The notes under the pieces: generated by a model
Told to the model about the DNA's origin: nothing
Seen by the model: only the letters and a program-made list of their open reading frames with translations
The model's database searches: none
Virus record (IMG/VR): IMGVR_UViG_3300028569_002417
Span: 62,001 to 126,000 of that record
DNA: 64,000 bases
Reading direction: 5' to 3' (one strand)
Made by a program: the position numbers and the translations under genes
Shown: in pieces, positions 1 to 64,000 of the stretch
Position numbering within the stretch: position 1 is the stretch's first letter
Layout: each line of letters opens with the position of its first letter

Positions 1-161
1 TTTTCAACTGGGGTGATGATGTTATCATCTTCTTTTATTTCAGGTTTACATTTCATATTATGAAGTATAAATTTTTCATTATTCCATAATGATTGTTGTT
101 TCATTACTGGGTTTGGTTTCTGGAGTGTGTAGAGAGATCCGTCCTTATTTTTGAGTGCCAT
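1..161 (-). CDS. Hypothetical protein, 5' part (runs off window)
   Basis: Manual translation from ATG at 161 gives MALKNKDGSLYTLQKPNPVMKQQSLWNNEKFILHNM..., open to the window edge. Not in the ORF track. Confidence 0.7.
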   Translation of the reverse strand, partial: MALKNKDGSLYTLQKPNPVMKQQSLWNNEKFILHNMKCKPEIKEDDNIITPVE

Positions 162-224
162 AAAATATAGTAGTGCAAAAAAAATTAGATTGTCATATAT
201 AAAATGACGCAAGAAGAGGTATTT

Positions 225-647
225 ATGGCATTGGTAGTTCCTAACGAGAGCGACATTTTGATGTTGCAATATATCGTTAATCAGTTGGCACAGGATGGTT
301 CTGCTGGCTCCGCAGGGGGCGAAAGAATCTTGCGTTTATATACTAACAACTATGTACCTTCAAAAACGACTTCAATAGGTGATTTGACTGAGACAACTGC
401 TTCTGGCTACTCTGTTATTACTTTGTATGGTGCCAACTGGACTGTGGCCACATCTACTGCTGGGACTAACTCAGCGGCATATAGTGAGCAAAGTTTCTAT
501 TTTTCGGCAGCAGTTACTGTTTACGGTTATTATGTTACTGATTTGACATCTAATTTATTGTGGGTGGAAAGATTTTCCACGGCTCCGTTCACCTTACCAT
601 CCGGTGGTGGCGAGATCGCAATTACCCCACGACTTACTCTTGATTAA
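225..647 (+). CDS. Probable virion structural protein
   Basis: ORF 204..647; the ATG at 225 follows GAGGT. Thr/Ser/Gly-rich beta-type composition, upstream ATATATA, downstream terminator. Confidence 0.6.
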   Translation: MALVVPNESDILMLQYIVNQLAQDGSAGSAGGERILRLYTNNYVPSKTTSIGDLTETTASGYSVITLYGANWTVATSTAGTNSAAYSEQSFYFSAAVTVYGYYVTDLTSNLLWVERFSTAPFTLPSGGGEIAITPRLTLD

Positions 648-667
648 AAAATATATAATTTAATTTC

Positions 668-699
668 AAAAACCCTGATCTCTTGGGATTGGGGTTTTT
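668..699 (+). terminator. Rho-independent terminator
   Basis: AAAAACCC-TGATC...GGATT-GGGGTTTTT stem followed by a T-run. Confidence 0.75.
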
Positions 700-765
700 G
701 TTTTTTTTATAAAATATCATTAAAAATTTGAGCTAACAAGTAAATAAAACAAAGGGGCAGAAATT

Positions 766-6756: not shown

Positions 6757-9120
6757 ATGGCGATTCTTAAAGGTTTTCCACCATCTAATACAATCAGCCC
6801 AAGTGTTAGAATTGCTGAAAAAGACTTGAGCTTCATCGCACCTGAACAGTCAACGCATACGGCAGGATTGGTTGGATTTGCCTCTAAAGGCCCAGTCAAT
6901 CTTCCTATTGCGATTGCTACTTCACGTCAGTTGCATACAACTTTTGGCAATCCTCATCCTGATATGGGTGATCCATTCTTGATTTATGCAGCAGATCAAT
7001 ATCTCCTCGTCGCAAATACACTTTATGTAGTGCGTGTTGCAGATACCGATCCTGTTTCTGATGAGCAGGCTACAACCGCTTCAGTAGATGTTCTGGCAGC
7101 TGGATCAATTATTGAAATTGAAGCTAACGGCGAAGCCGGTCCTTACACTTTTGACGAAGATTCATTCTTCCGTTGGAAACTTAATGGTCAGCTTTCAACA
7201 AAAACACTAGTTGTTCTTGCAGATACATATACAACTGATGAACTTGTCATAGCTTTGAATGATCAGCTTGATACTATTCTTGACGGTATTGAGTTTTACG
7301 CAAATACCTCTGATGAAATTGGTGTAAAAACCGTTTGGGCCTATGGACCTAGCGCCAGCCTTGAACTGGTTTCAATTCAGAATGCAATTTACGGTGGTTC
7401 TGTAAACGATACAGATAACATTCGTGACAACCCAACTGGTTTGGGTACAGGCATGACCCGTGCTTCAGTAACAGGTTCTAATGATCGTTGGCCAATCAAT
7501 GGCTATCAGGTTTCTGGCCATTATGAATTCACAGGTCTTACCGATCAGGTAATTGAGCTTGTGGTCGATGGCACTGATAATATTTTGATTGATCAAGTTG
7601 TTCAGACAATTACAATCGCTGATGGCGCTGCTTACACAAGCATCAACGATGTTATCTCTGATATTAATGATCAGAAGGCTGAAAACGGCGGAACTCTTCC
7701 CGGTGGCTGGACAGCACTAGCCTCTGGAACACAGCTTCGCTTCGTTACTAATCATCATGGCGCTGATGCTCGTCTTCGCATCAAGCCAGCTAGCACTGAA
7801 GTTTTTGGACTTTCAACTCTTACCGTAACTGGTACAAGTCCTGAAGGTACAACTGGCTCAGTCAGCATCGAAACTTTTGGTTTGGTTAACGGTGGTGCAA
7901 ATAGCGGTGGCGATGTTTCCTTTGTTATAAACGCTGATTCACCGGGCATTGATGGTAACGTAACTCAAGTTCTTATCACTAATAGCTCTGTTGATTCAAC
8001 TTTTAACTTGGAAGTTTATGCAAATGGAGTTCAAGTTGAATCTTGGGGCAATCTGACAAAGAATGCAACAAGCCGATTCTATGTTGAAACCTATTTGGCT
8101 CTGGTATCTGATTATGTCAGACCTATAGACAACACCTTAGTTGGCGCTGGTCCTGCTAGTGGCACTTACAATCTTGCAGGCGGCTCTGACGGTATCCCCG
8201 CAGATCCTGACAAGCAAGACGTGCTTCTAATGGGCAGTCCTATTGGCTACACAGGCATTTATACTCTCAGCGAACCTGAGCAAGTAAATATTGACCTGAT
8301 TGCAGTTCCCGGTCACTCAAGCACAGCAGTTGTTCAAGAACTTCTACTGTTCTGTCGTGACTATCGTCAAGATTGTCTTGCAATCATCGACGCTCCTTTC
8401 GGTTTGACTGTTAAGGAAGTTGTTGCTTGGCAGAACGGTGCTCATCCGCTTAACAATACTCGATTTGATAGCGATTTTGGCGCACTTTACTGGCCTTGGG
8501 TTAAAATCTATGATCCATACAACAAAGTTGATGTATGGTGTCCTCCAAGCGGTTCAATCATGGCAGTTATCGCTCGTAGCGATTTTCTGGGAGCTCCTTG
8601 GTTTGCTCCAGCTGGACTTACTCGTGGTGTTGTTCCTAACATTACAGATGTCTATAGTCGTCCTACTTTGGAAGAACGTGATACGATGTACGGCAATCGC
8701 AACTGCGTAAATCCAATCATACAGTTCGCTGATGTTCAAGGTTTCGTGGTATTCGGCCAGAAAACCTTGCAGCGCACTCCTACTGCTCTTGACCGTGTTA
8801 ATGTTCGCCGTCTGATGTTTTATATCGAGAAGGCTATTCGCACCGCAAGTCGCACCTTGTTGTTCGATCCAAATGATGGAATTTTCCAGCAGAAGTTTAT
8901 AACTATCGCAGAAAATATTCTTAGTCAGGTTCAAGTTGGTCGTGGGTTGACTGCTTATATTATCAAAGCCGATGCCGAACTCAATACTGTTGATGTTATC
9001 GACCGTAATGAATTCCGTGCAAGAATTGGTGTGCAACCAACCCGTGCTGCTGAATTTATGTTCATCGAATTCTCGATTCACAGAACTGGCAGCTTTGTAG
9101 TAGGCGCTGAAACATTCTAA
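6757..9120 (+). CDS. Contractile tail sheath protein (gp18-like)
   Basis: SPSV.I.EKD, ALYWPW, PPSG, PWFAPAG, NPI, GQKT, DRVNVRRL, QPTRAAEF motifs. Confidence 0.97.
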   Translation: MAILKGFPPSNTISPSVRIAEKDLSFIAPEQSTHTAGLVGFASKGPVNLPIAIATSRQLHTTFGNPHPDMGDPFLIYAADQYLLVANTLYVVRVADTDPVSDEQATTASVDVLAAGSIIEIEANGEAGPYTFDEDSFFRWKLNGQLSTKTLVVLADTYTTDELVIALNDQLDTILDGIEFYANTSDEIGVKTVWAYGPSASLELVSIQNAIYGGSVNDTDNIRDNPTGLGTGMTRASVTGSNDRWPINGYQVSGHYEFTGLTDQVIELVVDGTDNILIDQVVQTITIADGAAYTSINDVISDINDQKAENGGTLPGGWTALASGTQLRFVTNHHGADARLRIKPASTEVFGLSTLTVTGTSPEGTTGSVSIETFGLVNGGANSGGDVSFVINADSPGIDGNVTQVLITNSSVDSTFNLEVYANGVQVESWGNLTKNATSRFYVETYLALVSDYVRPIDNTLVGAGPASGTYNLAGGSDGIPADPDKQDVLLMGSPIGYTGIYTLSEPEQVNIDLIAVPGHSSTAVVQELLLFCRDYRQDCLAIIDAPFGLTVKEVVAWQNGAHPLNNTRFDSDFGALYWPWVKIYDPYNKVDVWCPPSGSIMAVIARSDFLGAPWFAPAGLTRGVVPNITDVYSRPTLEERDTMYGNRNCVNPIIQFADVQGFVVFGQKTLQRTPTALDRVNVRRLMFYIEKAIRTASRTLLFDPNDGIFQQKFITIAENILSQVQVGRGLTAYIIKADAELNTVDVIDRNEFRARIGVQPTRAAEFMFIEFSIHRTGSFVVGAETF

Positions 9121-9151: not shown

Positions 9152-9742
9152 ATGGCAGACATAACAAACATGGGATTAGGATCAATTGGCGGGAACAGTA
9201 TTGTTTTCAAAAGAAAGTACCGATGGACTTTCGCTGTGCGCTGGAATGGAGGAGACATTCCTACCGCATTCGTAAAAGTTGCAAACCGTCCCAATCTTAC
9301 AATTGAACAGACTGAAATTAACTATCTGCATGGTAAGATGTGGATTCCCGGTAAAGGTACTTGGGAAACACTAACTGTAAGCTACTACGATATTGGCGGT
9401 GATGATGCCAAAGGTATGAAAACCTTATGGGATTGGCTTGTTACAGTTTATAACTTCACCGATCCAGATACTCTGAAGCAGACATCAAAAAGAGGAGCTG
9501 ACGGCAACAGCACAGGTTGGGCCGCAGTTGGCAATCTTACCATGTATGATGGTACTGGTGCAGAAATGGAAAACTGGAGACTTAAGAATCTTTGGCCAGC
9601 TGCCATTAACTTCGGCGACCTTGATTACGGTTCTTCAGAAGTAGCGACACTAGATCTTACAATGAGATTTAGTGAGGCCAAATGGACTCCAAGTTGCGGT
9701 GTTCTACCACCTACTGCGACTCCAATCGGTTGCAACGGCTAA
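9152..9742 (+). CDS. Tail tube protein (gp19-like), probably major
   Basis: RP.LTIE......PGK.TWE.LTV.YYD, W.L...WP..INFGDLDY; follows the sheath gene. Confidence 0.9.
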   Translation: MADITNMGLGSIGGNSIVFKRKYRWTFAVRWNGGDIPTAFVKVANRPNLTIEQTEINYLHGKMWIPGKGTWETLTVSYYDIGGDDAKGMKTLWDWLVTVYNFTDPDTLKQTSKRGADGNSTGWAAVGNLTMYDGTGAEMENWRLKNLWPAAINFGDLDYGSSEVATLDLTMRFSEAKWTPSCGVLPPTATPIGCNG

Positions 9743-26210: not shown

Positions 26211-26245
26211 ATTTTTCCTTCCCAACTAATCTGTTGGCGTCTCAA

Positions 26246-30689: not shown

Positions 30690-30782
30690 AAAATATCTTA
30701 AAAAATTCTTCTTTATTACGAAGATTCTTACTGGGCAAGGATGCCTTGTTTTAATTATTTTTCACTTATGCATAAATAAAAC

Positions 30783-37855: not shown

Positions 37856-37914
37856 CTGTTTTGTCCTATATAAAATAGTTTTGAACCTAAAAATAAAATG
37901 AAAAGGCAATCTTT

Positions 37915-43400: not shown

Positions 43401-45083
43401 AGTGGAAACATAGTTCTTGGACCAAATCGCTTTGTTGATGCAGTTTACGATAGTACAACAGGTGGTTGGAGGGTTTATGGTGATAATTATCCTTATGTTT
43501 TACCAACAACAAATGGAACAAGTGGACAATTACTCACAACTAATGGTGTTAATAATTTAGCTTGGGCTAATGGATTTGCTCTAACTTCTGGAAGTGTTAC
43601 TTCTGGTTTTATTGGTGATAATTCTGTAAACAGTGGTAATGTTAGTAGCGGAAGCATTGGATTGGTTCATCTTGCTTCTGGCACTGTATTTTCTGGTACA
43701 TTCGTAACCTCTGGTAGTGTTCAGAGTGGAGCATTGGGCGACTCTGCTGTCCTTTCAGGAAGCGTTGGGTCAGGACAAATTGGAAGTATACACTTAGCTT
43801 CTGGAACAATTCCTGCTATCTTTAGCCTTACTTCGGGTGTTATTGTTTCTGGAATGATCGGAAATGAAGCTGTTGTTTCAGGAAGTATTGCAAGTGGAAG
43901 TATAGGGCAATTTGCAATTGCAAGTGGTAGTATCACAACTGAACATATCGCTTCTGGCGCTGTAATAAATGCAGATATTGCTGATAATGCAGTTACTAGT
44001 GGTAAAATATCTTCTGGCATTGTTGGTTCGGTTCATATTAGTAATGCTGGAGTTCTTTCTGGTAATATTGGTTCTGGACAGATAGGGTTTTATCATATTG
44101 CTTCTGGTGTAATTTCTACTGCTACACTTGGTTCAGGGCAAGTGACTTCTGGTGTAATTGCTAGCGGAAGTATTAGTAGTTTTAATTTATCTTCTGGTGT
44201 TGTCCAAAGTGGTCATATTGGTAATAATGCTGTAAATTCTGGAAATATAAGTAGTGGAAGTATTGGTGTTAATCATTTAATTTCTGGTTTGATTACGACA
44301 TTGACATTGGGAAGTGGACAGGTAACGAGTGGAAGTATAGCAAGTGGAAGTATAGGACGATTTCATATTAGTAATGCTGCTGTCGTCAGTGGAAGTATAG
44401 CAAGTGGAAGTATAGGACGATTTCATATTAGTAATGCTGCTGTCGTCAGTGGAAGTATAGCAAGTGGAAGTATAGGAACGAATCATTGTTCATCTGGTAC
44501 ACTTTTCACAGTAACAAATCCTTCGACAAATAGAGTTATCACAAGTTTGGCATCTGGTACAAATTCTGCAACAGCTAATACCAATTTGACTTATGATGGA
44601 TCAACTCTTACCGCTAATTCAGTAACGAGTGGTAGCACTGTTATAAGTGTTACTGGTCAAGCGGGTCAATTATTTTCTGTAACTGATAGTAATACTGGAG
44701 ATATTTATCAAATAGGTGATATTTCTGGTGTTCCGATCATGACTGTAAACAGTAATGGTTATGTAAAAATTGTAAGTAATACTTTTACTGGTCAATCTTC
44801 TAGTTTTACTGCTTTTAGTATTGCTGATACATCTGGTGTTGCAGCATTTATTGAATATTATGCGATCAACACAACAACTAGTGCATATAGGGCTGGAACT
44901 GTTTCATCTGTTTGGAATTCCACTGCTGACACGCTTGTTTATTCTGAAACATCTACAGACGATTTGGGTGGATCAACAATTGGACTTACATTTAGTGCTG
45001 CAATTACAAGTAACAATTTCGTTTTAACTGCTAATATAACTACTGGTACTTGGACCATTAAACTAGGAACTAGGGTGCTATAA
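40410..45083 (+). CDS. Ser-Gly pentapeptide-repeat fibre protein (1557 aa)
   Basis: (SGxI/Vx)n blocks separated by unique beta-rich domains. Confidence 0.8.
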   Translation: MRINQPPLFSGAVVSGFIGDSAVVSGSVGSGQIGSIHLASGTIPAGFSLTSGVIVSGFIGDNAVNSGNISSGAIGVNHLISGLITTLSLGSGQVTSGNIASGVVFRLLSGSINSGNIGDNAVNSGNVSSGSIGLVHLASGTVFSGTFVASGTVQSGSLGNASVVSGSIASGVIGLSHIASGVIQSGITLTSGSVVSGFIGNNAINSGNVSSGSIGVNHLISGLITTLSLGSGQVNSGNIASGVVFRLLSGSINSGNIGDTAVNSGNISSGSIGLSHLASGTVFSGTFVGSGTVQSGSLGNASVVSGSIASGVIGLSHIASGVIQSGITLTSGSVVSGFIGDAAVNSGNIASGQITGNHLASGTVLTQLTSGIITSGMIGNAAVVSGSIASGAIIAAGTNAQLQYNLSGYFAGTDAISYNNSSGHLSITAQSGTYVPLIIKGAALQSADLFDIIDASGNKKLYFSYTNNSVATMSIRAHGGGFGTMGWDIGSDSAYNYLKPVGGAGPGQWNIRDTVIMNMYGPSYTGPNTSPLPNIYFVEQNTNAGISIEPSFVSTIPNLTFSAISYGSGTTRATLIAGRLTLATPNPTNVGLTVKGANSQTGNLQEWSNSSGSAYASINASGTFFGTLSSGIVISGNIGNNAINSGNVSSGSIGLVHLASGTVFSGTFVGSGSVQSGSLGDSAVLSGNIGSGQIGSIHLASGTIPASFSLTSGVIVSGFIGNNAVNSGNISSGSVAGPHLASGVINAISGNVAISSGSLSVNTIFATSGNVGVGTSLVLRAANAVTSGAGGDIILQPGTQSVTGGNGSVKFLRTNSTTAIAVLPNYNSNNGGILWYRKSDNAEIARINCSDPDSGSLNFDCPFSFNFNNQASFNGSIAIIANGSIAIGGLVGGALKSATRHIIGVYSDYLTTSGGSFSFPSNTTNINSDTNNLTISASAFQRLNVTSGCTITGLSFPTAASHVDGRFIRLANVGTQNLTLSNQDALSSGNNRFYNYTSGNIVLGPNRFVDAVYDSTTGGWRVYGDNYPYVLPTTNGTSGQLLTTNGVNNLAWANGFALTSGSVTSGFIGDNSVNSGNVSSGSIGLVHLASGTVFSGTFVTSGSVQSGALGDSAVLSGSVGSGQIGSIHLASGTIPAIFSLTSGVIVSGMIGNEAVVSGSIASGSIGQFAIASGSITTEHIASGAVINADIADNAVTSGKISSGIVGSVHISNAGVLSGNIGSGQIGFYHIASGVISTATLGSGQVTSGVIASGSISSFNLSSGVVQSGHIGNNAVNSGNISSGSIGVNHLISGLITTLTLGSGQVTSGSIASGSIGRFHISNAAVVSGSIASGSIGRFHISNAAVVSGSIASGSIGTNHCSSGTLFTVTNPSTNRVITSLASGTNSATANTNLTYDGSTLTANSVTSGSTVISVTGQAGQLFSVTDSNTGDIYQIGDISGVPIMTVNSNGYVKIVSNTFTGQSSSFTAFSIADTSGVAAFIEYYAINTTTSAYRAGTVSSVWNSTADTLVYSETSTDDLGGSTIGLTFSAAITSNNFVLTANITTGTWTIKLGTRVL
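44328..44477 (+). repeat. Exact 60-nt tandem repeat x2.5
   Basis: Lines 44341 and 44401 are identical. Confidence 0.97.
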
Positions 45084-45856
45084 TGGCTATAATCGTAAAA
45101 GGTACTGTCAAGATAGCAAGACCAATTGTTCCAACAGATATTGCTGGTCTTCAACTATGGCTAGATGCTTCTGATTCTACCACTTTATTCCAAAATTCAG
45201 ATGGTACTACGCCTGCAACTGCTGATAGTGACCCAATAGGATATTGGGGAGATAAAAGTGGAAATGGCAACAATGTAATTCAATCTGATGTTTCATTAAA
45301 ACCATCTTTGAAATTGACAATACAGAATAATAAAAACACACTTCGATTTGACGGAACAAATGATAAATTAACTGGAAATTTATCTCCACAATCAAGTGAT
45401 CGCACAATGTTCATTGTTGCTAAAAGAACTAGCACTACATCTGCATGGCGTGGAGCAATTTTACTTAATTCCAATGACATAAATGATCAAACGGGAACAA
45501 CTAAATACATAATACAACAAGCTGGAAATGGAACAAACAGTCTTGGTGGCGGTCGCCCAACTCCTGGATTAGAATATACATATACTGGAAATGGTACTAA
45601 TTATTTTATAATTAGTCAGACAAATACGCTTACTGGATCGGCGGCTAAAATGAACGGTGCATCTGCTGGAAGTGTATCTCATGCATCGACTTCTATTGGG
45701 ACAGGAGTTCAAGTGCGAATAGGTTCTGGCAGACTTTCCAACACTGAAACGTGGTACGGTGATATTGCAGAAGTTATTGTTTATAATTCAGTATTATCAG
45801 CATATAATATAGTATTTTTAGAATCCTACCTCAATACGAAGTGGGGTGTTTACTAA
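45083..45856 (+). CDS. LamG/ConA-like lectin domain protein
   Basis: LQLWLDA.D, W.DKSGNG, FDG.ND, GDIAEVIVYN..LS, YL..KWG. Confidence 0.85.
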   Translation: MAIIVKGTVKIARPIVPTDIAGLQLWLDASDSTTLFQNSDGTTPATADSDPIGYWGDKSGNGNNVIQSDVSLKPSLKLTIQNNKNTLRFDGTNDKLTGNLSPQSSDRTMFIVAKRTSTTSAWRGAILLNSNDINDQTGTTKYIIQQAGNGTNSLGGGRPTPGLEYTYTGNGTNYFIISQTNTLTGSAAKMNGASAGSVSHASTSIGTGVQVRIGSGRLSNTETWYGDIAEVIVYNSVLSAYNIVFLESYLNTKWGVY

Positions 45857-52213: not shown

Positions 52214-52229
52214 AAATTTAGGATAAAAA

Positions 52230-54477: not shown

Positions 54478-57400
54478 ATGCCAATCAGCTTTCCATCTTC
54501 GCCTTCATCTGGACAAAGATATGAGTTCAGCTTCAACGCTTGGACTTATAATGGTACATTTTGGCAATCGACGGGATCTTCTGGCCAAATTACCAGTGGT
54601 GCAATAGGCGACAATGTAATTTTTAGTGGCAATATTGCCAGTGGAAGTATTAGTGCTTTTAATTTAGCTAGTGGAGTAGGTGGTTCCAGTCTTGTTCTGA
54701 CAAGTGGTTCAATTACATCTGGTTTTATTGGAAATGATGCAGTAACAAGCGGAAACATCGCATCAGGTCAGGTGGGTCGAGTCCAAATAAATGATTATAA
54801 TGTGGGAACTAATCTCTCCAAAATAAGAGATGGAATAAAAGGATATTTTGCTGGTGGAAGTACTGGAGATTATGTTGCAACAGCAGACAAATTAACATAT
54901 TCGACTGACACGACTGCTGCACAAACCACTGCGAATATAAGTCAAGCAAGAGAGCAATTAGCAGGAATTTCAGAAGGATCAACAAAAGGTTATTTTGCTG
55001 GTGGAATTAATGCAGGAGGTTTTATTGCAACAGCAGATAAAATAACATATTCAAATGATACGACTATAGCACAAACCACTGCAAATTTAAGTAAAGAAAG
55101 ACAAGGATTGGCTGGTTGTTCTGGACAAGGAACAAAAGGTTATTTTGCTGGTGGATCTAGTGGTGCACTTGTTGCAACAGCAGACAAATTAACATATTCG
55201 ACTGACACGACTGCTGCACAAACCACTGCGAATATAAGTCAAGCAAGAGAGCAATTAGCAGGAATTTCAGAAGGATCAACAAAAGGTTATTTTGCTGGTG
55301 GTCGTAGTAGTTTAACCCAGTACAGCACAACGGATAAGATATTATATTCCACAGATACAACTGCTGCACAAACAACAGCCAATCTAAGTCAAGCAAGACG
55401 ACAATTGGCTGGATGCGATGGAGAAGGAAAAAAAGGCTATTTTGCTGGTGGGAATGGTCCTGTGGCAACAGCAGACAAATTAACATATTCCACAGACATA
55501 ACTGTCGCCCAAACAACAGCAAATTTAAGTCAAGCAAAAAATAGTTTAGCAGGTTGTTCTGGAGAAGGAACAAAAGGATTCTTTGCTGGTGGGACTACTG
55601 GTGCCACGCCTATCGCAACAGCAGATAAAATAACATATTCAACTGATACAACTATAGCACAAACAAGTGCTAATTTAAGTCAAGCAAGATTTAACTTGGC
55701 AGGTGTTGGAAATAATTATTCAACAGTATTTGGAGATAATTGCGTTTTTTCTGGCAATATTTCTTCAAGCGAAATTGGATCAATTCATTTTGGATTCTCG
55801 TATCCAACTAGCGGTTCAATTAAATCAGGCAATATCGGCGACAATTCTGTAAATTCTGGAAATATTGGTAGTGGACAAGTTGGAAGATTTCATATAAGTT
55901 ATTTTAATCCGGGTAATAATTTAGCTTTAGTTAGAGGTGGAATAAAAGGTTATTTTGCTGGTGGATATATTGCTGGTGGTGTTGCAACAGCAAATAAATT
56001 AACATATTCAACAGACACAACTACAGTTCAAGCAACAGCAAATTTAAGTCAGTCAAGAGGTTTTTTGGCAGGTTGTTCTGGAGAAGGATCAAAAGGTTAT
56101 TTTGCTGGTGGATCTAATGACGCATCTACAGCATTAGCAACGGCAGATATAGTATCATATTTAACAGATACAACTGCTGCTCAAACAAGTGCAAATCTAA
56201 GTCAAGCAAGATATATATTAGCTGGTTGTTCTGGAGAAAAAACAAAAGGTTATTTTGCTGGTGGAAACACAGGTGCTGCTGTTGCAACAGCAGACAAATT
56301 AACATATTCAACTGACACAACTGCCGCTCAAGCAAGTGCAAATCTAAGTCAAGCGAGAGGATACTTAGCAGGAGTTTCTGAAGGATCAACAAAAGGTTAT
56401 TTTGCTGGTGGATCTACATCTGATGAATCTGGTGTAGCATTATTAACAGCAGATAAATTAACATATTCAACAGACACAACCGCTGCCCAAACATCAGCTA
56501 ATCTAAGTCAAGCAAGATCAGGATTAGCAGGTTGTGACGGAGATGGAATAAAAGGTTATTTTGCTGGTGGATATACTAGCAACTATGTTGCAACATCAGA
56601 TAAATTAACATATTCAACAGACACAACCGCTGCCCAAACATCAGCTAATCTAAGTCAAGCAAGATTATCTTTGGCTGGAATTTCAGAAGGATTAACAAAA
56701 GGTTATTTTGCTGGTGGAAACATAGGTTCAAGTGTTGCAACAGCAGACAAATTAACATATTCAACTGACACAACTATTGCCCAAACAACTGCAAATCTAA
56801 GTCAAGCAAGAGCACAATTGGCTGGAGCAAGTCAAGAATTCACTAGTGTATTTGGCAACAATTCAATAACTTCTGGCAACATATCATCTGGTCAAATTGG
56901 ACAATTTCATTTTTTATCTGGAGTTATACGAACTGCAACGAATATCGTAAACAGTGGAAATTTTGGTGATTCTTCCGTTAATTCAGGAAACATTGCATCA
57001 GGAGTTGTATCCCAATTTAATTTTTCTGATTCTTCTATTTACTCTGATTCAGTAAGAAGCGGAAACGTATCAACATTTAAGTTCGCCAATAATGCCGTTT
57101 TCAGCGGAAATATAAGTAGTAGCAATACAATAACAACTGTAAACTTAGCTTCAGGAGGCGTGCGGAGTGGTGCATTTGGTGACAATGCAATAAGTAGTGG
57201 AGATATTCTCAGCGGTAGAATCACCAGAGATAACATCAGTAGCGGAGCATTCCAATCATTTAATATTGCGAGCGGATCAATAAGCACTGTGAAACTGGCA
57301 AGCGGAGCAGCAGTAGGCGCATTCAACCTTGCAAGCGGAATTGTCGTGAGCGGAAACATTGCTTCTGGCTCTATATTTTTTACCCCATTTATTGATGGAG

Positions 57401-60400
57401 CTATTGAAAGCGGTAACATTGCAAGCGGCGCAATTGGAAATACACATTTGGGGGCTGCGTCCGTAACAAGTGGTGCAGTTCCTAGTGGAACAGTTATTTT
57501 CAATATGGTTGGTGCGAATGCAACAGTTGCTTATAACTTTGCAGATGTCGCATTAGCTTCAGGAAACTTTGCACTCCAGTCTGTAACTGGTGAAAATCTT
57601 GCAGATGGACTTTGGCCAATTCCTACTGCATTTTATGTGTCTGGCGGTATTACCGCTTTCATGTTCAATAACAACTCAATTGTTAGTGGATCAATATCAA
57701 CAACAACCACTTTAATTAGTCAAGGTTATTTTGCAGGTGGATCTACAGGAGCAAATGTTTCAACAACAGACAAAATATTATATTCAACAGACACAACTGC
57801 CGCTCAAACATCTGCCAATCTAAGTCAATCAAGAAATGAATTGGCGGGAATTTCTGATTATACAACTAATGGTTATTTTGCTGGTGGAGCAACATCTTCG
57901 TTTTCTGGACATGTTGCAACAACAGATAAAATTGTATATTCAACAGACACAACTGCCGCTCAAACATCTGCAAATTTAAGTCAAGCAAGACAAGGATTGG
58001 CTGGATGTTCAGGAGAAAGAACAAAAGGATATTTTGCTGGTGGAACTACTCATCAAGTAAACAGCTTAAACACAGCAGACAAGCTAACATATTCAACAGG
58101 CACAACTACCGCACAATCAAGTGCAAACTTAAGTCAAGCAAGATATTACCTTACTGGAATTTCAGAAGGAACAACTAAAGGTTATTTTGCTGGTGGGCAG
58201 AGTAGCACCGTTTTAGTAACGGCAGACAAATTAACATTTTCAAATGATACAACTGCTGCTCAAACAACAGCGGATCTTAGCACGGCAACAGCCTATATTT
58301 CTGGATGTTCTGGCGAAGGAACTAAAGGTTATTTTGCTGGTGGTGGTACATTTGCCATAACAATTAATGCATATAAATTAACATACACAACAGATACAAC
58401 TACCGCTCAAACTACTGCAAATTTAAGTCAAGCAAGAAGAGAATTAGCAGGAATTTCAGAAGGATCAACTGAAGGTTATTTTGCTGGCGGTAACGGTCCT
58501 GTGACAACAACGGATAAGCTATTATTTTCTACTGATACAACTGCTGCACAAACAACCGCTAATTTGAGTCAAGCAAGAAATAGTTTAGCAGGAATTGATG
58601 GCGCACAAAATTATTTAATCATACCTTACCTAGTCACTTCTGGAAAACTAACAACAACAGAAGCCAACGAAATTCGTTTTACAAACTTGGCATCTGGTTC
58701 AGTATTAAGCGGAAATATAGTTTCTGGTGTTGTATTCAGCGATGCAACCACAAATAACTTCTCAAACGCAGGAGTAAGAAGCGGAAATATTGCCTCTGGA
58801 CAAGTTGGTAGAGTTCATTTTGCCAATGAAACAATACTTTCAGGAAATATAGGAAGCGGTGTAATAAGATTCCCAGAATTCTTCGGCGATACTACAACAT
58901 ACACAAATATTGCCAGCGGACAAATTGGGAATGTACATCTTGAATCAATCGATGTTTCACTTCAAACAAAAATGGGATATTTTGCTCCTGTTACATTTTT
59001 TGGTATAACAGGAAATAAATTAAATTATTCCACAGATACAACTTCTTCAATTATAATTTTGAACCAAGCAAGAGTTGCTTTAACTGGAATATCAGAAGGA
59101 TTAACAAAAGGATATTTTGCAGGAGGATATAGTACAGGCGGGACAATTGTTGCAATAACAGAAAAATTCTCATATTCAACAGAAACAACTATTACTCAAG
59201 CAACAGCAAATCTAAGCCAAGCAAGATATCGTTTGGCGGGATGCTCTGGAGAAAGAACAAAAGGTTATTTTGCCGGTGGAACTACTGGAGGATCAGATAT
59301 TGCAACAGCAGACAAATTAACATATTCAACAGACACAACTGTCGCACAAGCAAGCGCAAACTTAAGTCAAGGAAGATTTTACCTTGCTGGAATTTCAGAA
59401 GGATTAACAAAAGGTTATTTTGCTGGTGGAGTATCAATAGCAATCGTTGCAACAGCAGAAAAATTAACATATTCAACAGACACCACAACGGCACAAACAA
59501 CTGCAAATTTAAGCCAAGCAAGATCAGGGGTGGTTGGATGCTCAGGTGAAGGAACAAAAGGTTATTTTGCTGGCGGAGATACAGATTCAGTAGTCACAAC
59601 AGCAGATAAAATAACATATTCAACTGATACGACTGTTGCTCAAACAAGTGCTAATTTAAGTCAAGCAAGATTTTCATTATCAAGTGTATCCCAAGGATCT
59701 ACAAAAGGTTATTTTACAGGAGGAACACTCGATTTTAGTATTATTTATAAAACAGCAGATAAATTAACATATTCAACAGAAACAACTGCTGCTCAAACAA
59801 CAGCAGATTTAAGTGGAGCAAATTATGATTTTGCTGGAATTGATGGTGGCGTGTCTTATTCTCAATTGATTGCAAGCAGCAAGCTTTCATCTGGAACAAT
59901 TGGTCTTACAACAGCAAGTGGACAGAATGCAGCATTCCCATACAATCTCTCAGAAACAGCAGAAATAAATACAAACAGACCAATGTTTGATTATTTCGTT
60001 TTCCAAGAACAGTGTTCAGGCATCAAAGCAGTTTGCATTGCATCTGGAAGCAGAGTTGTAAGGGCACAAAGAGCAAGTGGAATGAGACTTCCAGCAATTG
60101 GCGTTACAAGCGGAACTGTCAACAGCGGAACAATTGGAGCAGTTTACTATTACGGATATGTTGGAAGAACTGGAACATTCGCTCAAAACTCTGGTCTAAA
60201 TAATGGAATTTCTGGATTCCAAGGAAGACCTCTTTATGTCGGATCGGGCGGAAATATCGTTAATCAAAGCGGAATGCGTGGAGCATCCTCTGGCGCACCA
60301 TTCATATCAGGCGACATGCAACAACAAATAGGCATCGCCATGAGCGGAGGACTATTCGTTATGCCAAGTCCAAGAGTTGTAAGATCAGGATTCAGAGGCA

Positions 60401-60426
60401 CATTACCTTATAATCATCCTGCTTAA
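54478..60426 (+). CDS. SG-repeat fibre carrying four 6-bladed Kelch-like propellers (1982 aa)
   Basis: 24 repeats of KGYFAGG-var-ATADKLTYSTDT...ANLSQAR-xx-LAG in 4 groups of 6. Confidence 0.85.
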   Translation: MPISFPSSPSSGQRYEFSFNAWTYNGTFWQSTGSSGQITSGAIGDNVIFSGNIASGSISAFNLASGVGGSSLVLTSGSITSGFIGNDAVTSGNIASGQVGRVQINDYNVGTNLSKIRDGIKGYFAGGSTGDYVATADKLTYSTDTTAAQTTANISQAREQLAGISEGSTKGYFAGGINAGGFIATADKITYSNDTTIAQTTANLSKERQGLAGCSGQGTKGYFAGGSSGALVATADKLTYSTDTTAAQTTANISQAREQLAGISEGSTKGYFAGGRSSLTQYSTTDKILYSTDTTAAQTTANLSQARRQLAGCDGEGKKGYFAGGNGPVATADKLTYSTDITVAQTTANLSQAKNSLAGCSGEGTKGFFAGGTTGATPIATADKITYSTDTTIAQTSANLSQARFNLAGVGNNYSTVFGDNCVFSGNISSSEIGSIHFGFSYPTSGSIKSGNIGDNSVNSGNIGSGQVGRFHISYFNPGNNLALVRGGIKGYFAGGYIAGGVATANKLTYSTDTTTVQATANLSQSRGFLAGCSGEGSKGYFAGGSNDASTALATADIVSYLTDTTAAQTSANLSQARYILAGCSGEKTKGYFAGGNTGAAVATADKLTYSTDTTAAQASANLSQARGYLAGVSEGSTKGYFAGGSTSDESGVALLTADKLTYSTDTTAAQTSANLSQARSGLAGCDGDGIKGYFAGGYTSNYVATSDKLTYSTDTTAAQTSANLSQARLSLAGISEGLTKGYFAGGNIGSSVATADKLTYSTDTTIAQTTANLSQARAQLAGASQEFTSVFGNNSITSGNISSGQIGQFHFLSGVIRTATNIVNSGNFGDSSVNSGNIASGVVSQFNFSDSSIYSDSVRSGNVSTFKFANNAVFSGNISSSNTITTVNLASGGVRSGAFGDNAISSGDILSGRITRDNISSGAFQSFNIASGSISTVKLASGAAVGAFNLASGIVVSGNIASGSIFFTPFIDGAIESGNIASGAIGNTHLGAASVTSGAVPSGTVIFNMVGANATVAYNFADVALASGNFALQSVTGENLADGLWPIPTAFYVSGGITAFMFNNNSIVSGSISTTTTLISQGYFAGGSTGANVSTTDKILYSTDTTAAQTSANLSQSRNELAGISDYTTNGYFAGGATSSFSGHVATTDKIVYSTDTTAAQTSANLSQARQGLAGCSGERTKGYFAGGTTHQVNSLNTADKLTYSTGTTTAQSSANLSQARYYLTGISEGTTKGYFAGGQSSTVLVTADKLTFSNDTTAAQTTADLSTATAYISGCSGEGTKGYFAGGGTFAITINAYKLTYTTDTTTAQTTANLSQARRELAGISEGSTEGYFAGGNGPVTTTDKLLFSTDTTAAQTTANLSQARNSLAGIDGAQNYLIIPYLVTSGKLTTTEANEIRFTNLASGSVLSGNIVSGVVFSDATTNNFSNAGVRSGNIASGQVGRVHFANETILSGNIGSGVIRFPEFFGDTTTYTNIASGQIGNVHLESIDVSLQTKMGYFAPVTFFGITGNKLNYSTDTTSSIIILNQARVALTGISEGLTKGYFAGGYSTGGTIVAITEKFSYSTETTITQATANLSQARYRLAGCSGERTKGYFAGGTTGGSDIATADKLTYSTDTTVAQASANLSQGRFYLAGISEGLTKGYFAGGVSIAIVATAEKLTYSTDTTTAQTTANLSQARSGVVGCSGEGTKGYFAGGDTDSVVTTADKITYSTDTTVAQTSANLSQARFSLSSVSQGSTKGYFTGGTLDFSIIYKTADKLTYSTETTAAQTTADLSGANYDFAGIDGGVSYSQLIASSKLSSGTIGLTTASGQNAAFPYNLSETAEINTNRPMFDYFVFQEQCSGIKAVCIASGSRVVRAQRASGMRLPAIGVTSGTVNSGTIGAVYYYGYVGRTGTFAQNSGLNNGISGFQGRPLYVGSGGNIVNQSGMRGASSGAPFISGDMQQQIGIAMSGGLFVMPSPRVVRSGFRGTLPYNHPA
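54838..59850 (+). repeat. Kelch-like repeat blocks (~54838-55710, 55945-56835, 57721-58600, 58972-59850)
   Basis: Unit about 141-159 nt; repeats counted manually. Confidence 0.9.
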
Positions 60427-61388: not shown

Positions 61389-62558
61389 TCATTCGTATGA
61401 ATTGCCAGTAGCAAAATCAACATGACGACAACGAACACTTGCATCAACCAACAACTTAAATCCCTTCTCACGCAACTTCTGAGACAAAAAACTATCCTGC
61501 GTGAGATGAGCAGTTGTCACTGTCCAAGGATATTCTGTCTGAAGAAAACATTCAATAGGGAAAAGAGTGAAACCTTGAGCAATAGTGTAAACTTCATGCA
61601 CACCAACATCATCTTTATTCAAAGTCAATGCCTGACGCTTGCCAGCAATAACCTGAATGTGAACACCTTCTGGATATGGGACTTTCTTCACATAATATCC
61701 ACCCAAAACAGCCTTAGGATCACCAATTTCACGGTAACGAGCCAAAAGCCTTTGGAATCCATCAGTAGGTGGGAAAGTATCATCCTCAACAGTCAAAAGC
61801 ATATCGCAACCATCATTCAGGGCAGTCTGGATGGCATCGTTATACGCTTCTGCGGTTGTCCTCCCAAATACATTCAGGAATTTAACCTGAACTCCTGATG
61901 GAATGGCTAGATTTTCCAAAACAGGCAATCTCTCTGCCTTTTCACGAGTTGGAACAACAATTAAAATCTTGACATCACCAACTTCTAGATACTTTTTCTC
62001 AACTTCCCTGATATGGTCCAGCTTTGGAGTCGCTGCAAGATTGATCTGGCGTAGTGCTTCACTGTTACCAACGCCAACCCTTCCAGTCGCCTGAAGATCT
62101 TGCTGCGCTTGTCGATCTAGACGAAGCTTCCAATAGCTTTCCTGAGCATTATCAATTTCTTCTCGTGTATATTTCTTGGGAAAACTTTGATAAATCTTAT
62201 AAAGAGCATCCAATTCTCTTAAAGCGCCTAGCACGGCATAATCTTGTTCTTGAAGGTCAATTCTTTTCAAGTCTGCATCAATCTGATCAATTTCAGTTCC
62301 CTTGTCTTCAAGTTCTTTAATTTGAATTTCGATCCTTCTTTTTCCTAGTTTCGCTCTTTTCAAATTAGCAACTTTTATTTGTATCTCAAGGACACACTGG
62401 CTAAATTGCATTTCAATTGTATCGTGCTGACCAACTACAAATTTTTCAATTACATATGATGTTCTTGGCTGTTGGATCTCAAGAAATGATTGTTCCAATT
62501 CCTCAATAGCTTTTACTGCTTCATTTACTCTTTCATCAATCGTAGTCAATTCGTTCAT
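61389..62558 (-). CDS. Coiled-coil domain fused to GT2-like domain
   Basis: N-terminal helical domain; ILIVVPT, AYN, VEDD, GFTL, QD..L, D..V.C.H. Confidence 0.75.
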   Translation of the reverse strand: MNELTTIDERVNEAVKAIEELEQSFLEIQQPRTSYVIEKFVVGQHDTIEMQFSQCVLEIQIKVANLKRAKLGKRRIEIQIKELEDKGTEIDQIDADLKRIDLQEQDYAVLGALRELDALYKIYQSFPKKYTREEIDNAQESYWKLRLDRQAQQDLQATGRVGVGNSEALRQINLAATPKLDHIREVEKKYLEVGDVKILIVVPTREKAERLPVLENLAIPSGVQVKFLNVFGRTTAEAYNDAIQTALNDGCDMLLTVEDDTFPPTDGFQRLLARYREIGDPKAVLGGYYVKKVPYPEGVHIQVIAGKRQALTLNKDDVGVHEVYTIAQGFTLFPIECFLQTEYPWTVTTAHLTQDSFLSQKLREKGFKLLVDASVRCRHVDFATGNSYE

Positions 62559-62571
62559 TTTTAAGCCTCAT

Positions 62572-62620
62572 TTGAAAAAATAAATCTATTACATTATAAT
62601 GTCAATGACACCATTGTCAA
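62572..62620. promoter_or_regulatory. Overlapping divergent sigma70 promoters sharing a palindromic -10
   Basis: Plus strand TTGAAA-17-TATAAT; minus strand TTGACA-16-TATAAT. Confidence 0.75.
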
Positions 62621-62638
62621 AATAAATGAGATTCAATT

Positions 62639-63292
62639 ATGCCGGGATCATGGGAACTTATCAATCAAAATCGTGTCCTATGTTGCATTTTAACGAGAGA
62701 ATATGCACCAGTTGCATGGGCTTTCGGACTCAGAAACCTGCAAATTCCCGGTGCAGTCACAGCACTCCAAGGAATGCCATATGACCATGCACGAAATACA
62801 GGATGCTTAAAACTACTCGAACTCGGCTGGGAATGGCTATTCTTTCTCGATGACGATGTCATTCCTCCTCCTGATGCAATCATAAAACTAATGTCTCACA
62901 AGAAACCAATCGTAAGTGGCTTGTACTACAGAAGATACGAACCACTTGCCCCTGTAATGTTGAGAGAATCAGAAAATGGTCCTCAATGGATTCAAGAATT
63001 TAATGCTCCTGACCTTCTGGAAGTCGATTATGTAGGAGCAGGATGCCTTCTCATACATCGTGATGTTATCAAACAATTACCTCCACTCAGCAATCGTTGC
63101 CAATGGTTTGAATGGCGATGCGATAGAACTGATCTTCCTCATCTTGAAAAAACAAGCGAAGACTTTACTTTCTGCAAACATGCCAGAAATCATGGATTCA
63201 AAATTTATGTTGATACCAGTGTGCAATGCCGACATGCAGGATTGGGACAAAGTGAAATTGGCGGATTCAAACCATTGGAGATCAGAGCCTGA
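62639..63292 (+). CDS. GT2-like glycosyltransferase
   Basis: ARN, FFLDDD, VSGLY, GAGCLLI, SEDF.FC, D....C.H. Confidence 0.88.
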   Translation: MPGSWELINQNRVLCCILTREYAPVAWAFGLRNLQIPGAVTALQGMPYDHARNTGCLKLLELGWEWLFFLDDDVIPPPDAIIKLMSHKKPIVSGLYYRRYEPLAPVMLRESENGPQWIQEFNAPDLLEVDYVGAGCLLIHRDVIKQLPPLSNRCQWFEWRCDRTDLPHLEKTSEDFTFCKHARNHGFKIYVDTSVQCRHAGLGQSEIGGFKPLEIRA

Positions 63293-64000
63293 TGAAACTT
63301 ACATACTTGCCAACAACTCCAATGAAAAAGTTAAAAATCTGTGTCATATCCAGCACAGTCCTACATTGCCCCCCAAAGGGCTATTCTGGACTAGAAATGC
63401 TGGCTTGGCAAATAGCTGAAGGGCTTACAGCCAAAGGTCATGAAGTAATGCTTGTTGCACCAAGAGGATCAACAAGTAGTTGTGAAATTCATGAAACAAC
63501 ACAATATGAACCAGAAGGACAAGCCTACAGCGGTTATTGGCACAAACTACCAAGCTTTGATGTGATCATCGATCATAGTTGGGAAAAATGGAGCTACATC
63601 CTGAAAATGGAAGGTAAGCTTCCACAACCAATCCTTGGCGTTCTACACGCTCCTGTAGACACTATGTACAGCACAGCACCATCAGTCCCATTCCCATGCT
63701 TTGTTTGCATCAGCAAAGACCAATCAGATGGTTGCTCCGCACACCTGAAAGTCGCTTCCCGTGTCGCTTATAACGGAGTTGATGTTAATTTTTATAAAAA
63801 CACAGGATTAACAAGAAACGACCGTTATCTCTTCCTCGCCAGAATAAGCACAATCAAGGGTCCACATATTGCTGTTGATGTGGCCAATACTTGTAAAATT
63901 GGACTTGATCTCGTAGGAGATGACAGAATCACAGGAGAACCAGAACTTCTCAACAGTATTAAATCTAAATGCTCTGTATCGCCCAATCTTAGGTATGTAG
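63292..64000 (+). CDS. GT4 (GT-B) glycosyltransferase, partial
   Basis: Manual translation MKLTYLPTTPMKKLKICVIS...PPKGYSGLE...GHEV...YNGVD...FLARI...KG; open to the window end. Confidence 0.85.
   Translation, partial: MKLTYLPTTPMKKLKICVISSTVLHCPPKGYSGLEMLAWQIAEGLTAKGHEVMLVAPRGSTSSCEIHETTQYEPEGQAYSGYWHKLPSFDVIIDHSWEKWSYILKMEGKLPQPILGVLHAPVDTMYSTAPSVPFPCFVCISKDQSDGCSAHLKVASRVAYNGVDVNFYKNTGLTRNDRYLFLARISTIKGPHIAVDVANTCKIGLDLVGDDRITGEPELLNSIKSKCSVSPNLRYV

What the first reader, a model, noticed from the sequence alone, without database searches (positions are those of the whole stretch)
1..64000. Near-complete CCWGG avoidance, visible in Pro-Gly codon choice
Seen: Pro is mostly CCA/CCT in this AT-rich DNA, but Pro-Gly is written CCC-GG or CCG-GG almost everywhere on both strands (e.g. 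~2395, 3244, 4361, 5037, 5100, 8308, 21748, 30372, 47908, 62642). My manual read found only one CCWGG (CCTGG at 45563, in a LamG gene), where a few dozen would be expected by chance. Known: CCWGG is the Dcm/EcoRII site. Inference: long-term selection by a host CCWGG restriction or methylation system; the LamG gene holding the exception may be a recent import.
Basis: partly seen in the sequence, partly recalled or inferred. Interest (0 to 1): 0.6.

Follow-up and report, generated by a model that had tools for sequence, protein, structure and literature searches.

The report
Restriction-site purge in a huge lake phage
This fragment of an uncultured huge lake-water phage has removed nearly every CCWGG, and about 25 other restriction-enzyme target sequences, by silent codon changes; this is a clear and unusually broad case of a well-known phage trick for escaping host restriction enzymes.

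Summary
The window has one CCWGG against about 61 expected. The whole 225.5 kb contig has one against 150-250, and about 276 kb of this phage (with an overlapping strain) still has only that one. Pro before Gly is CCC/CCG in 105 of 106 cases, against 5-12% in other contexts. The other two reading frames and the intergenic DNA are purged as well.

TTTAAA, CGCG and about 20 hexamer palindromes are also absent. So are YACGTR, CYCGRG, GRCGYC and the asymmetric CAGCTC and GGTCTC. GATC and GANTC occur at expected frequency, and the phage encodes a Dam-type (DPPY) methyltransferase and an N4-cytosine-type (SPPY) methyltransferase, but no C5 methyltransferase.

CCWGG avoidance marks one clade of a family of huge T4-like lake phages and is kept up by ongoing selection: neutral drift would have regenerated 9-72 sites in five relatives, and none is seen. 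Other avoided sites differ between lineages.

The best explanation is passive escape from host Type II restriction, combined with self-methylation. The host was not identified. The "recent import" idea for the LamG gene is not supported. This is a known kind of phenomenon in a new lineage.

The parts
1..64000 (.). Whole window: near-total absence of CCWGG (1 site). Also absent are TTTAAA, CGCG, CTGCAG, GGATCC, TTCGAA, AACGTT, TGCGCA, AGCGCT and GGTACC. ACGT is reduced to about a third of expectation.
45563..45567 (+). The only CCWGG: CCTGG in codons ACT-CCT-GGA (Thr-Pro-Gly) of the LamG-like gene. A synonymous escape to CCC or CCG is available but has not been used.
   Evidence: The same site is present in strain G006 and in a contig of run X3 that has no differences over 45367-45697.
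45083..45856 (+). Gene for a 257-aa protein with a weak Laminin_G_3 (concanavalin-like lectin) match, in the tail-fibre region. It holds the exceptional site and shows no sign of foreign origin.
   Evidence: Pfam E 8e-4, below the curated cut-off. It has 0 of the other avoided sites against 3.0 expected, and ordinary GC.
6757..9120 (+). Tail sheath gene, used as family marker. It contains conserved Pro-Gly codons written CCC-GG or CCG-GG (for example at 8308) where non-avoiding relatives have CCA-GG or CCT-GG.
   Evidence: Pfam Phage_sheath_1 and Phage_sheath_1C; codon alignment of 20 relatives; tree.
8308..8312 (+). Example of the replacement form: CCCGG at a Pro-Gly codon pair in the sheath gene. 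It is one of 41 CCSGG in the window. Genome-wide, CCSGG is over-represented as a by-product of the purge (110 in coding DNA against 35 expected).
9495..9500 (.). The only copy in the 225 kb contig of the asymmetric word CAGCTC/GAGCTG (about 60 expected).
55163..55168 (.). The only GTGCAC in the contig, inside the 1982-aa repeat-rich fibre gene; conserved in strain G006.
26236..26241 (.). One of three remaining GRCGYC sites in the contig (37-52 expected); intergenic.

Best explanation
The window is part of an uncultured, apparently virulent, huge T4-like myovirus from lake water. CheckV estimates the 225.5 kb contig at about 52% complete. Its DNA has been purged of the recognition sequences of many Type II restriction enzymes, so that incoming unmodified DNA offers them nothing to cut. 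CCWGG, the EcoRII/BstNI-type target that is also the Dcm methylation site, is the most conspicuous case because it has the highest expected count. Every CCWGG can be removed without changing the protein. Pro-Gly becomes CCS-GG. A C-ending codon before TGG or AGG changes its third base. CAG becomes CAA, and CTG becomes another Leu codon, when flanked by a C and a G. All of these routes have been used. About 25 other specificities are purged in the same way. Two common targets that remain at expected frequency, GATC and GANTC, are probably covered in part by the phage's own methyltransferases: a Dam-type N6-adenine enzyme and an N4-cytosine-type enzyme. The strategy is therefore mixed, with avoidance for most sites and self-methylation for a few. 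What is shown: the depletion, its synonymous nature, its confinement to one clade, its maintenance over divergence, and the presence and motif class of the methyltransferases. What is inferred: that host restriction endonucleases are the selective agent, which enzymes they are, and the targets of the two methyltransferases. The single surviving CCTGG is most simply a tolerated or young site. EcoRII-type (Type IIE) enzymes need more than one recognition sequence to cut, so a solitary site would be harmless to such an enzyme.
For: Depletion under three null models. Codon-context test in all three frames. Intergenic depletion. The purged set is specific. It comprises TTTAAA 0 of 123-226 expected, CGCG 0 of 87-109, YACGTR 0 of 50-71, TTCGAA 0 of 34-89, CTGCAG, GGATCC, AACGTT, TGCGCA, AGCGCT, GTCGAC, GGTACC, CGATCG, CYCGRG, GRCGYC, GTGCAC, TCCGGA, ACCGGT, CCTAGG, CAGCTC 1 of about 60 and GGTCTC 2 of about 30-40. 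Seven GC-rich palindromes (for example GCTAGC, TGGCCA, CAGCTG, CCATGG) and all the non-palindromic flank variants of ACGT, CCGG and GCGC remain. At conserved Pro-Gly codons of the sheath gene the avoiders have CCS-GG where non-avoiding relatives have CCW-GG. Avoiders form one clade with 100/99 support. Neutral drift would have regenerated about 9-72 CCWGG sites in five relatives that are 70-92% identical in nucleotides, and none is seen. No C5 methyltransferase was found in six family records. A Dam-family methyltransferase with DPPY lies at G000:30814-31473 and is conserved in relatives; a PF01555 methyltransferase with TSPPY lies in the 50 kb that strain G006 adds. GATC is at 0.93 and GANTC at 0.95 of expectation. 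No integrase was found in five records. Site avoidance is an established strategy, strongest in non-temperate dsDNA phages and for orthodox Type II sites (PMC6286503). EcoRII is a Type IIE enzyme stimulated by additional recognition sequences (PMC4081073).
Against: The host is unknown, so no cognate restriction enzyme has been shown for any purged site. About 25 specificities is a great many for one host and may reflect a host population or several hosts. Distant high-GC relatives share part of the purged set, including the asymmetric CAGCTC, although they presumably infect quite different hosts. That is not an obvious prediction of purely host-specific pressure. The contig is only about half a genome, so a C5 methyltransferase or other anti-restriction genes could lie in the missing part. 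The targets assigned to the two methyltransferases are guesses from family resemblance, and both score below NCBIfam's curated cut-offs.
Confidence: 0.8

Rival explanations
1. What is harmful is methylation, not cleavage of unmethylated DNA. A Dcm-like host methyltransferase marks CCWGG on progeny DNA, and that DNA is then attacked by methylation-dependent (Type IV, McrBC/Mrr-like) nucleases in the next host. Losing the sites avoids being marked.
For: CCWGG is the Dcm site (established knowledge). Nothing in the sequence separates the two directions of selection. The phage has no C5 methyltransferase of its own.
Against: This would have to be repeated for about 25 other sequences, most of them classic Type IIP endonuclease targets. 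The phage methylates itself with two enzymes, which fits poorly with a general danger from carrying methyl groups.
Confidence: 0.07
2. The phage itself makes sequence-specific nucleases to destroy host DNA, and must lack their sites because it has no matching methyltransferases.
For: Part of the purged set is shared by distant relatives of very different GC content, as a lineage-inherited trait would be. The window encodes a PD-(D/E)XK nuclease (18856-19428) and gp46/47-like nuclease subunits.
Against: It would require about 25 different phage nucleases. The purged sets change between close relatives: TTTAAA needs at least two changes on the tree, ACGT is absent only in G002 and G004, and L016/L020 purge almost nothing. 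No restriction-endonuclease family appeared among the window proteins scanned, though the rest of the contig was not scanned protein by protein.
Confidence: 0.05
3. Mutational decay without selection: CCWGG methylated at the inner cytosine deaminates to CTWGG/CCWAG until the sites are gone.
For: CpG is moderately depleted (rho 0.60), so some methylation-linked or context-linked mutation bias may exist.
Against: The deamination products are not specially enriched: CTAGG/CCTAG is at 0.59 and CTTGG/CCAAG at 1.56. The strongest gain is in CCSGG (2.0), which is a transversion product, and other neighbours are also raised. Removal is essentially complete and follows whichever synonymous route is open. 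Neutral drift should regenerate sites and does not.
Confidence: 0.02
4. A non-defence cause: general avoidance of palindromes (secondary structure, recombination), codon-pair or translational preference, or an assembly or sequencing artefact.
For: Hexamer palindromes as a class are at 0.70-0.78 of expectation.
Against: The purge is word-specific. Seven GC-rich hexamer palindromes, most AT-rich ones and all the 4-mers except CGCG and ACGT are near expectation, and no interrupted palindrome is absent. Two asymmetric words are purged. Intergenic DNA is affected too. The same single site is seen in two independent assemblies, and the phage is present in runs from 14 studies.
Confidence: 0.02

Closest known systems
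Restriction-site avoidance in virulent dsDNA phages (reviewed and quantified by Rusinov et al. 2018, PMC6286503; the classic cases recalled from memory are B. subtilis phages lacking GGCC and coliphages T3/T7 with few EcoRII sites)
   Same: There is complete or near-complete loss of short, mostly palindromic Type II recognition sequences. It is achieved silently, in an apparently non-temperate dsDNA phage, and the avoided set changes between relatives.
   Different: The breadth is unusual: about 25 specificities including two asymmetric words, over at least 276 kb. The setting is also new: an uncultured family of huge (about 430-500 kb by CheckV's estimates) lake phages with no known host. The cognate enzymes are unknown.
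T4-like cyanophage S-SSM7 (NC_015287), used here as a reference
   Same: A 50 kb stretch lacks 12 testable hexamer palindromes as well as CCGG and YACGTR. Nine of the 12 are also absent or nearly absent here (a tenth, GCATGC, is only depleted), so multi-site purging on this scale occurs in other large myoviruses.
   Different: S-SSM7 keeps CCWGG (43 against 61), TTTAAA and CGCG. The sheath proteins are only about 31% identical.
T4 Dam and other phage-encoded orphan methyltransferases (self-methylation as anti-restriction)
   Same: The phage carries a Dam-family enzyme with DPPY and a beta-class PF01555 enzyme with SPPY, with no adjacent endonuclease recognised. GATC and GANTC are not avoided.
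   Different: The targets were not determined. Both enzymes fall below NCBIfam's curated cut-offs for the named equivalogs. Both genes lie outside the window.
EcoRII and other Type IIE/IIF enzymes that need two or more sites (PMC4081073)
   Same: A genome with one isolated CCWGG would be refractory to such an enzyme, which would explain why the last site is tolerated in two strains.
   Different: This is purely an analogy. The enzyme acting on this phage is unknown, and the site may simply be young.

Membership tests
Restriction-site avoidance (passive anti-restriction) | The word is strongly under-represented against composition-matched nulls. | tested here: met
   1 site against 60.7 (dinucleotide shuffle, window), about 243 (Markov, genome) and 149 +/- 8 (codon shuffle).
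Restriction-site avoidance (passive anti-restriction) | Removal is by silent changes, in every reading frame and in non-coding DNA. | tested here: met
Restriction-site avoidance (passive anti-restriction) | The depletion is maintained by selection and is not a relic. | tested here: met
   0 sites in five relatives at 70-92% nucleotide identity, where about 9-72 would have arisen neutrally (rough estimate). Avoiders form one clade.
Restriction-site avoidance (passive anti-restriction) | The word is the recognition sequence of a known restriction-modification system. | not testable with these tools
   No REBASE copy was on hand. That CCWGG is the EcoRII/Dcm site, and the prototypes named for the other words, rest on established knowledge and memory.
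Restriction-site avoidance (passive anti-restriction) | The host encodes the cognate endonuclease. | not testable with these tools
   The host was not identified.
Restriction-site avoidance (passive anti-restriction) | The phage is dsDNA and non-temperate, the class in which avoidance is pronounced. | tested here: inconclusive
   T4-like tail, gp46/47 and RNR genes are present. No PF00589 integrase was found in five family records, but all of those records are fragments.
Decay by 5-methylcytosine deamination | A specific excess of the products CTWGG/CCWAG. | tested here: not met
   CTAGG/CCTAG is at 0.59 and CTTGG/CCAAG at 1.56, while CCSGG at 2.0 is the largest gain.
Dam-family (D12 class) N6-adenine DNA methyltransferase (gene at G000:30814-31473, outside the window) | A Pfam PF02086 match above the cut-off, and the DPPY catalytic motif. 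| tested here: met
   72.9 bits against a cut-off of 22. DPPY is present in the translation. The nearest solved structure is M1.DpnII.
Dam-family (D12 class) N6-adenine DNA methyltransferase (gene at G000:30814-31473, outside the window) | The NCBIfam TIGR00571 'dam' cut-off, and GATC specificity. | tested here: not met
   80 bits against a cut-off of 114.85. Specificity is not testable; the only support is that GATC is not avoided (0.93).
Beta-class N4-cytosine DNA methyltransferase (gene at G006:134131-134877, outside the window and outside G000) | A PF01555 match above the cut-off, and motif IV of SPPY type, not DPPY. | tested here: met
   188.9 bits against a cut-off of 26.7. TSPPY is present in the translation. 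Relatives are named cytosine-N4-specific by JGI. That SPPY marks N4-cytosine enzymes is established knowledge and was not tested here; the target site is unknown.

The most novel reading that the evidence does not exclude
The set of purged words may be a heritable, fast-evolving imprint of the restriction repertoire that each lineage of this huge-phage family faces. It can be read from sequence alone and could be used to assign uncultured huge phages to hosts. In the high-GC branch the purge reaches 28-32 of about 45 testable hexamer palindromes within about 22 kb, while 4-mers are spared. That could mean a host population with an exceptionally diverse Type II arsenal. More speculatively, it could mean a defence that attacks 6-bp palindromes as a class.
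Probability: 0.12. Interest if true: 0.65.

Novelty: new member of a known kind. Interest (0 to 1): 0.4.

Why it matters
The finding shows that an abundant, uncultured huge phage, found in lake metagenomes from 14 studies, relies on sequence-level stealth against a very large restriction repertoire and adds two methyltransferases of its own. The list of purged words is in effect a prediction of which restriction enzymes its unknown host population carries. That gives a testable handle for host assignment, by matching the list against methylomes and restriction-modification gene sets of co-occurring bacteria. It also offers a natural series for studying how quickly avoidance is gained and lost, since clades within one family avoid different sets. 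It does not reveal a new mechanism.

Tried and rejected
Host identification did not succeed by any route.
- No tRNA genes were found in the contig, and there is no psbA.
- The single genome-contig scan with a sheath profile returned only contigs binned into unrelated MAGs (Chloracidobacterium, Bacteriovoracaceae, Gammaproteobacteria and others). These look like mis-binned phage DNA.
- CTP synthase turned out to be a conserved core gene of the phage family (69-100% identity on contigs up to 673 kb), so it says nothing about the host. The record names of relatives carry no organism.
- The N4-type methyltransferase has homologues at 95% identity or more only in this phage population. The next ones (79-64%) lie in other phage-like contigs with no endonuclease neighbour that could give a specificity.
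- A literature search for the enzyme recalled as cutting CAGCTC found nothing useful. The prototype names in this report are therefore from memory.
- A 2025 paper on a new lineage of large aquatic phages (PMC12619734) could not be linked to this family and was not used.

Other points.
- An SD-like motif lies upstream of 35% of the crude gene starts, against 6-8% in controls. This is a weak hint against a Bacteroidota host and nothing more.
- The read laying tables were truncated, so the state of the CCTGG site in runs X4 and X8 could not be read. Only X1 and X3 are informative.
- The structure, complex, RNA and atlas tools were not needed.
Full report
WHAT THE SEQUENCE IS. The window is bases 62001-126000 of a single 225,527-bp contig with 36% G+C. 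The contig is an IMG/VR virus record, linear, and CheckV estimates it at about 52% complete. The window carries a T4-like tail module: a gp15-like sheath stabiliser, a tail sheath, two gp19-like tube proteins and a baseplate protein. It also carries a sigma-70-like factor, both ribonucleotide reductase subunits, CTP synthase, a gp46/gp47-like SMC/Mre11 pair, a RecD-like helicase and a PD-(D/E)XK nuclease. There are also glycosyltransferases, two FkbM-family methyltransferases and a run of very large repeat-rich fibre genes. No close relative exists among cultured phages; the best sheath match is 37% identity. Metagenomic viral contigs hold 49 related loci, and CTP synthase homologues of the family sit on contigs up to 673 kb. 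A second IMG/VR contig, G006 (168,478 bp), is a 99.4-99.9% identical strain. It overlaps the last 118 kb of the contig and runs 50 kb beyond it. The phage occurs in lake-water metagenomes from 14 studies. No integrase was found in five family records.

CCWGG occurs once in the window, against 60.7 +/- 7.7 in dinucleotide-preserving shuffles. It occurs once in the whole contig, against about 243-251 under Markov models and 149 +/- 8 under a within-gene synonymous-codon shuffle. G006 has the same single site and no other, so about 276 kb of this phage holds one CCWGG. On a crude call of 268 ORFs, Pro before a GG-starting codon is CCC or CCG in 105 of 106 cases, while CCC+CCG make up 5% of Pro codons before other G-starting codons and 12% elsewhere. 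The other two frames behave the same way. No C-ending Ser/Pro/Thr/Ala codon stands before TGG or AGG. Gln between a C-ending and a G-starting codon is always CAA (101 of 101). Leu in that context is never CTG. Intergenic DNA has none, against about 9 expected. As a by-product CCSGG is over-represented, at 110 against 35.

Many other words are absent or nearly absent from the 225 kb contig; in the list below, figures are observed count against expected.
- TTTAAA: 0 against 123-226.
- CGCG: 0 against 87-109.
- TTCGAA, CTGCAG, GGATCC, AACGTT, TGCGCA, AGCGCT, GGCGCC, GGTACC, GTCGAC, CGATCG, CCTAGG and CCCGGG: all 0.
- GTGCAC, TCCGGA, ACCGGT and GGGCCC: 1 each.
- The degenerate sites CYCGRG (0 against 20-31), GRCGYC (3 against 37-52) and YACGTR (0 against 50-71).
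- Two asymmetric words: CAGCTC (1 against about 60) and GGTCTC (2 against about 30-40).
ACGT is reduced to 0.3-0.4 of expectation.

The purge is word-specific, not a general dislike of palindromes or of G+C. GCTAGC, TGGCCA, CAGCTG, CCATGG, GAGCTC, ATCGAT and most AT-rich hexamers are near expectation. CCGG as a tetramer is at 1.2 although all four NCCGGN palindromes are gone. The 110 remaining ACGT lie only in the flank classes that belong to none of the purged hexamers. No interrupted palindrome is absent. From memory, and not checked against REBASE, these words are the targets of enzymes such as DraI/AhaIII, BstUI/FnuDII, BstBI/AsuII, PstI, BamHI, AclI, FspI/AviII, AfeI, KpnI, SalI, PvuI, AvaI, AcyI, BsaAI, ApaLI, BspEI, AgeI, AvrII and BsaI.

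ACTIVE PROTECTION EXISTS BESIDE AVOIDANCE. No C5 methyltransferase was found in this contig or in five relatives' records. A Dam-family enzyme lies at contig 30814-31473, outside the window. It scores 72.9 bits against Pfam PF02086, its closest solved structure is M1.DpnII, it has a DPPY motif, and it is conserved in three relatives. A PF01555 enzyme lies in the 50 kb that only G006 covers. It scores 188.9 bits and has a TSPPY motif IV, which by established knowledge marks N4-cytosine enzymes. Its best named matches are CcrM and N4-cytosine methyltransferases, and its relatives are annotated cytosine-N4-specific. GATC (0.93 of expectation) and GANTC (0.95) are not avoided. GGATCC and CGATCG contain GATC, but by my recollection their enzymes are not blocked by Dam methylation, and both are purged. 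This supports a mixed strategy, but the targets of both enzymes remain inferred.

EVOLUTION IN THE FAMILY. Ten-to-86-kb pieces of 15 relatives were profiled. All low-GC relatives with at least 75% sheath identity lack both CCWGG and CGCG: G001 to G005 have 0 CCWGG against 22-78 expected. On a sheath tree these form one clade with 100/99 support. The clade also contains L014, a 56% G+C member that is only half depleted. Sister lineages at 38% G+C (L016-L020, L051) keep CCWGG at expectation. At three conserved Pro-Gly codons of the sheath gene they read CCA-GG or CCT-GG where every avoider reads CCC-GG or CCG-GG. Other words vary within the clade. TTTAAA is purged in G000, G001 and G002 but not in G003, G004 or G005, which needs at least two changes on the tree. 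ACGT is entirely absent in G002 and G004. CTGCAG and TTCGAA are present in G004. High-GC relatives keep CCWGG but lack 28-32 of about 45 testable hexamer palindromes within about 22 kb. A rough neutral estimate multiplies the number of words one substitution away from CCWGG by half the nucleotide divergence and by one third. It predicts 9-72 new CCWGG sites in G001-G005, and none is present. The avoidance is therefore maintained by ongoing purifying selection.

MUTATION OR SELECTION. The products expected from deamination of 5-methylcytosine in CCWGG are not specially enriched: CTAGG/CCTAG is at 0.59 and CTTGG/CCAAG at 1.56. The largest gain is in CCSGG (2.0), and several other neighbours are raised. 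Together with the frame-by-frame synonymous routes, this points to selection acting on whichever silent change is available, and not to a single mutational pathway.

THE LONE SITE AND THE LamG GENE. The CCTGG lies in Thr-Pro-Gly of a 257-aa protein with a weak Laminin_G_3 match. It is not an assembly error. G006 differs at four other positions of the 624 aligned bases and has the same CCTGG, and a contig of run X3 covers it without any difference. The gene shows no mark of recent import. It has none of the other purged words, against 3.0 expected when its protein is re-encoded with the genome's own codon usage (P about 0.04). Its G+C is 0.368 against a mean of 0.352, and its GC3 is 0.198 against 0.270 +/- 0.053. 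Singleton leftovers of six other specificities are scattered over the contig and are conserved in both strains. A solitary site would be harmless to an EcoRII-type enzyme, which needs additional recognition sequences for cleavage (PMC4081073). Alternatively the site is simply young. The gene does lie in a fibre region where contigs of different runs show many rearrangement joints, so exchange with a similarly purged relative cannot be excluded.

HOW UNUSUAL IT IS. Site avoidance has been known for decades. A survey of almost 4000 viral genomes found complete or nearly complete elimination of sites in about a tenth of them, chiefly in non-temperate dsDNA phages and for orthodox Type II sites (PMC6286503). 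As a yardstick, 50 kb of the marine T4-like cyanophage S-SSM7 lacks 12 testable hexamer palindromes plus CCGG and YACGTR but keeps CCWGG. The same length of Microcystis phage Ma-LMM01 lacks none. Fifty-kb pieces of the present contig lack 11-16. The case is therefore a strong one and, counting CCWGG, TTTAAA, CGCG and the asymmetric words, a broad one. But it is of a known kind.

LIMITS. The gene calls are a simple longest-ORF heuristic, so codon counts are approximate. Markov expectations for nested words depend on the order used, and both orders are quoted. The contig is about half a genome. The host is unknown. All attempts to find it are listed under Tried and rejected.

VERDICT. Of the interpretation, selection by restriction is well supported though indirect, and the single-system view and the LamG import idea are not. 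It is a new member of a known kind, of moderate interest.

Noticed in passing
Contig G000:30814-31473 (outside the window; locus L091:1456-2217): A Dam-family N6-adenine DNA methyltransferase with a DPPY motif, conserved in relatives G003, G004 and G007. GATC is not avoided in this genome.
   Followed up: yes
G006:134131-134877 (locus L093:1441-2313, minus strand), in the 50 kb beyond the end of the window's contig: A beta-class PF01555 DNA methyltransferase with TSPPY motif IV, suggesting N4-cytosine methylation; target unknown. The gene next to it varies between strains (447 aa against 280-285 aa, with a faint lectin-like match).
   Followed up: partly
Loci L021, L024, L028 and L050 (relatives at 52-55% G+C): Within about 22 kb each, 28-32 of about 45 testable hexamer palindromes are absent (all hexamer palindromes together are at 0.28-0.33 of expectation), while most 4-mer palindromes are near expectation. 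This purge is far broader than in the window's own clade.
   Followed up: partly
window 38147-39724, 40410-45083, 46918-49452, 50033-54464 and 54478-60426: A run of very large genes (up to 1982 aa) built of long tandem repeats (units of 111-420 bp; about 147-150 bp units many times over in the largest). They are probably tail fibres. Contigs from different lake runs show many joints and skips between these repeats, suggesting recombination or assembly ambiguity and strain variation there.
   Followed up: partly
window 30369-30448: A 21-bp tandem repeat (3.8 copies) rich in Pro-Gly codons, holding four of the seven CCSGG clustered at 30315-30435. It lies at the 5' end of the minus-strand Mre11-like (Metallophos) gene or just upstream of it. 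The overlapping plus-strand ORF 30310-30786 looks spurious.
   Followed up: no
window 22883-23515 (minus strand) and 34817-35608 (plus strand): Two FkbM-family methyltransferases (usually sugar or small-molecule O-methyltransferases, not DNA enzymes), next to glycosyltransferases (11422-12399; the TPR-heptosyltransferase-like gene at 36479-37909) and a caspase-like peptidase (35605-36498). This is a possible surface-glycan or virion-glycosylation module.
   Followed up: no
window 10707-11252 (minus strand): A small protein with a sigma-70 region 2 match inside the tail gene cluster, possibly a phage late sigma factor.
   Followed up: no
Whole contig G000: No tRNA genes were found in 225 kb of a huge phage (aragorn). 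An SD-like motif lies upstream of 35% of the crude gene starts, against 6-8% in control positions. CpG is at 0.60 and TpA at 0.64 of expectation.
   Followed up: partly
Records G004 (L039) and G007 (L021): IMG/VR classes these two relatives (86 kb and 343 kb) as proviruses, although no integrase was found in G007 (G004 was not searched) and the family otherwise looks virulent. This may be a classification artefact.
   Followed up: no
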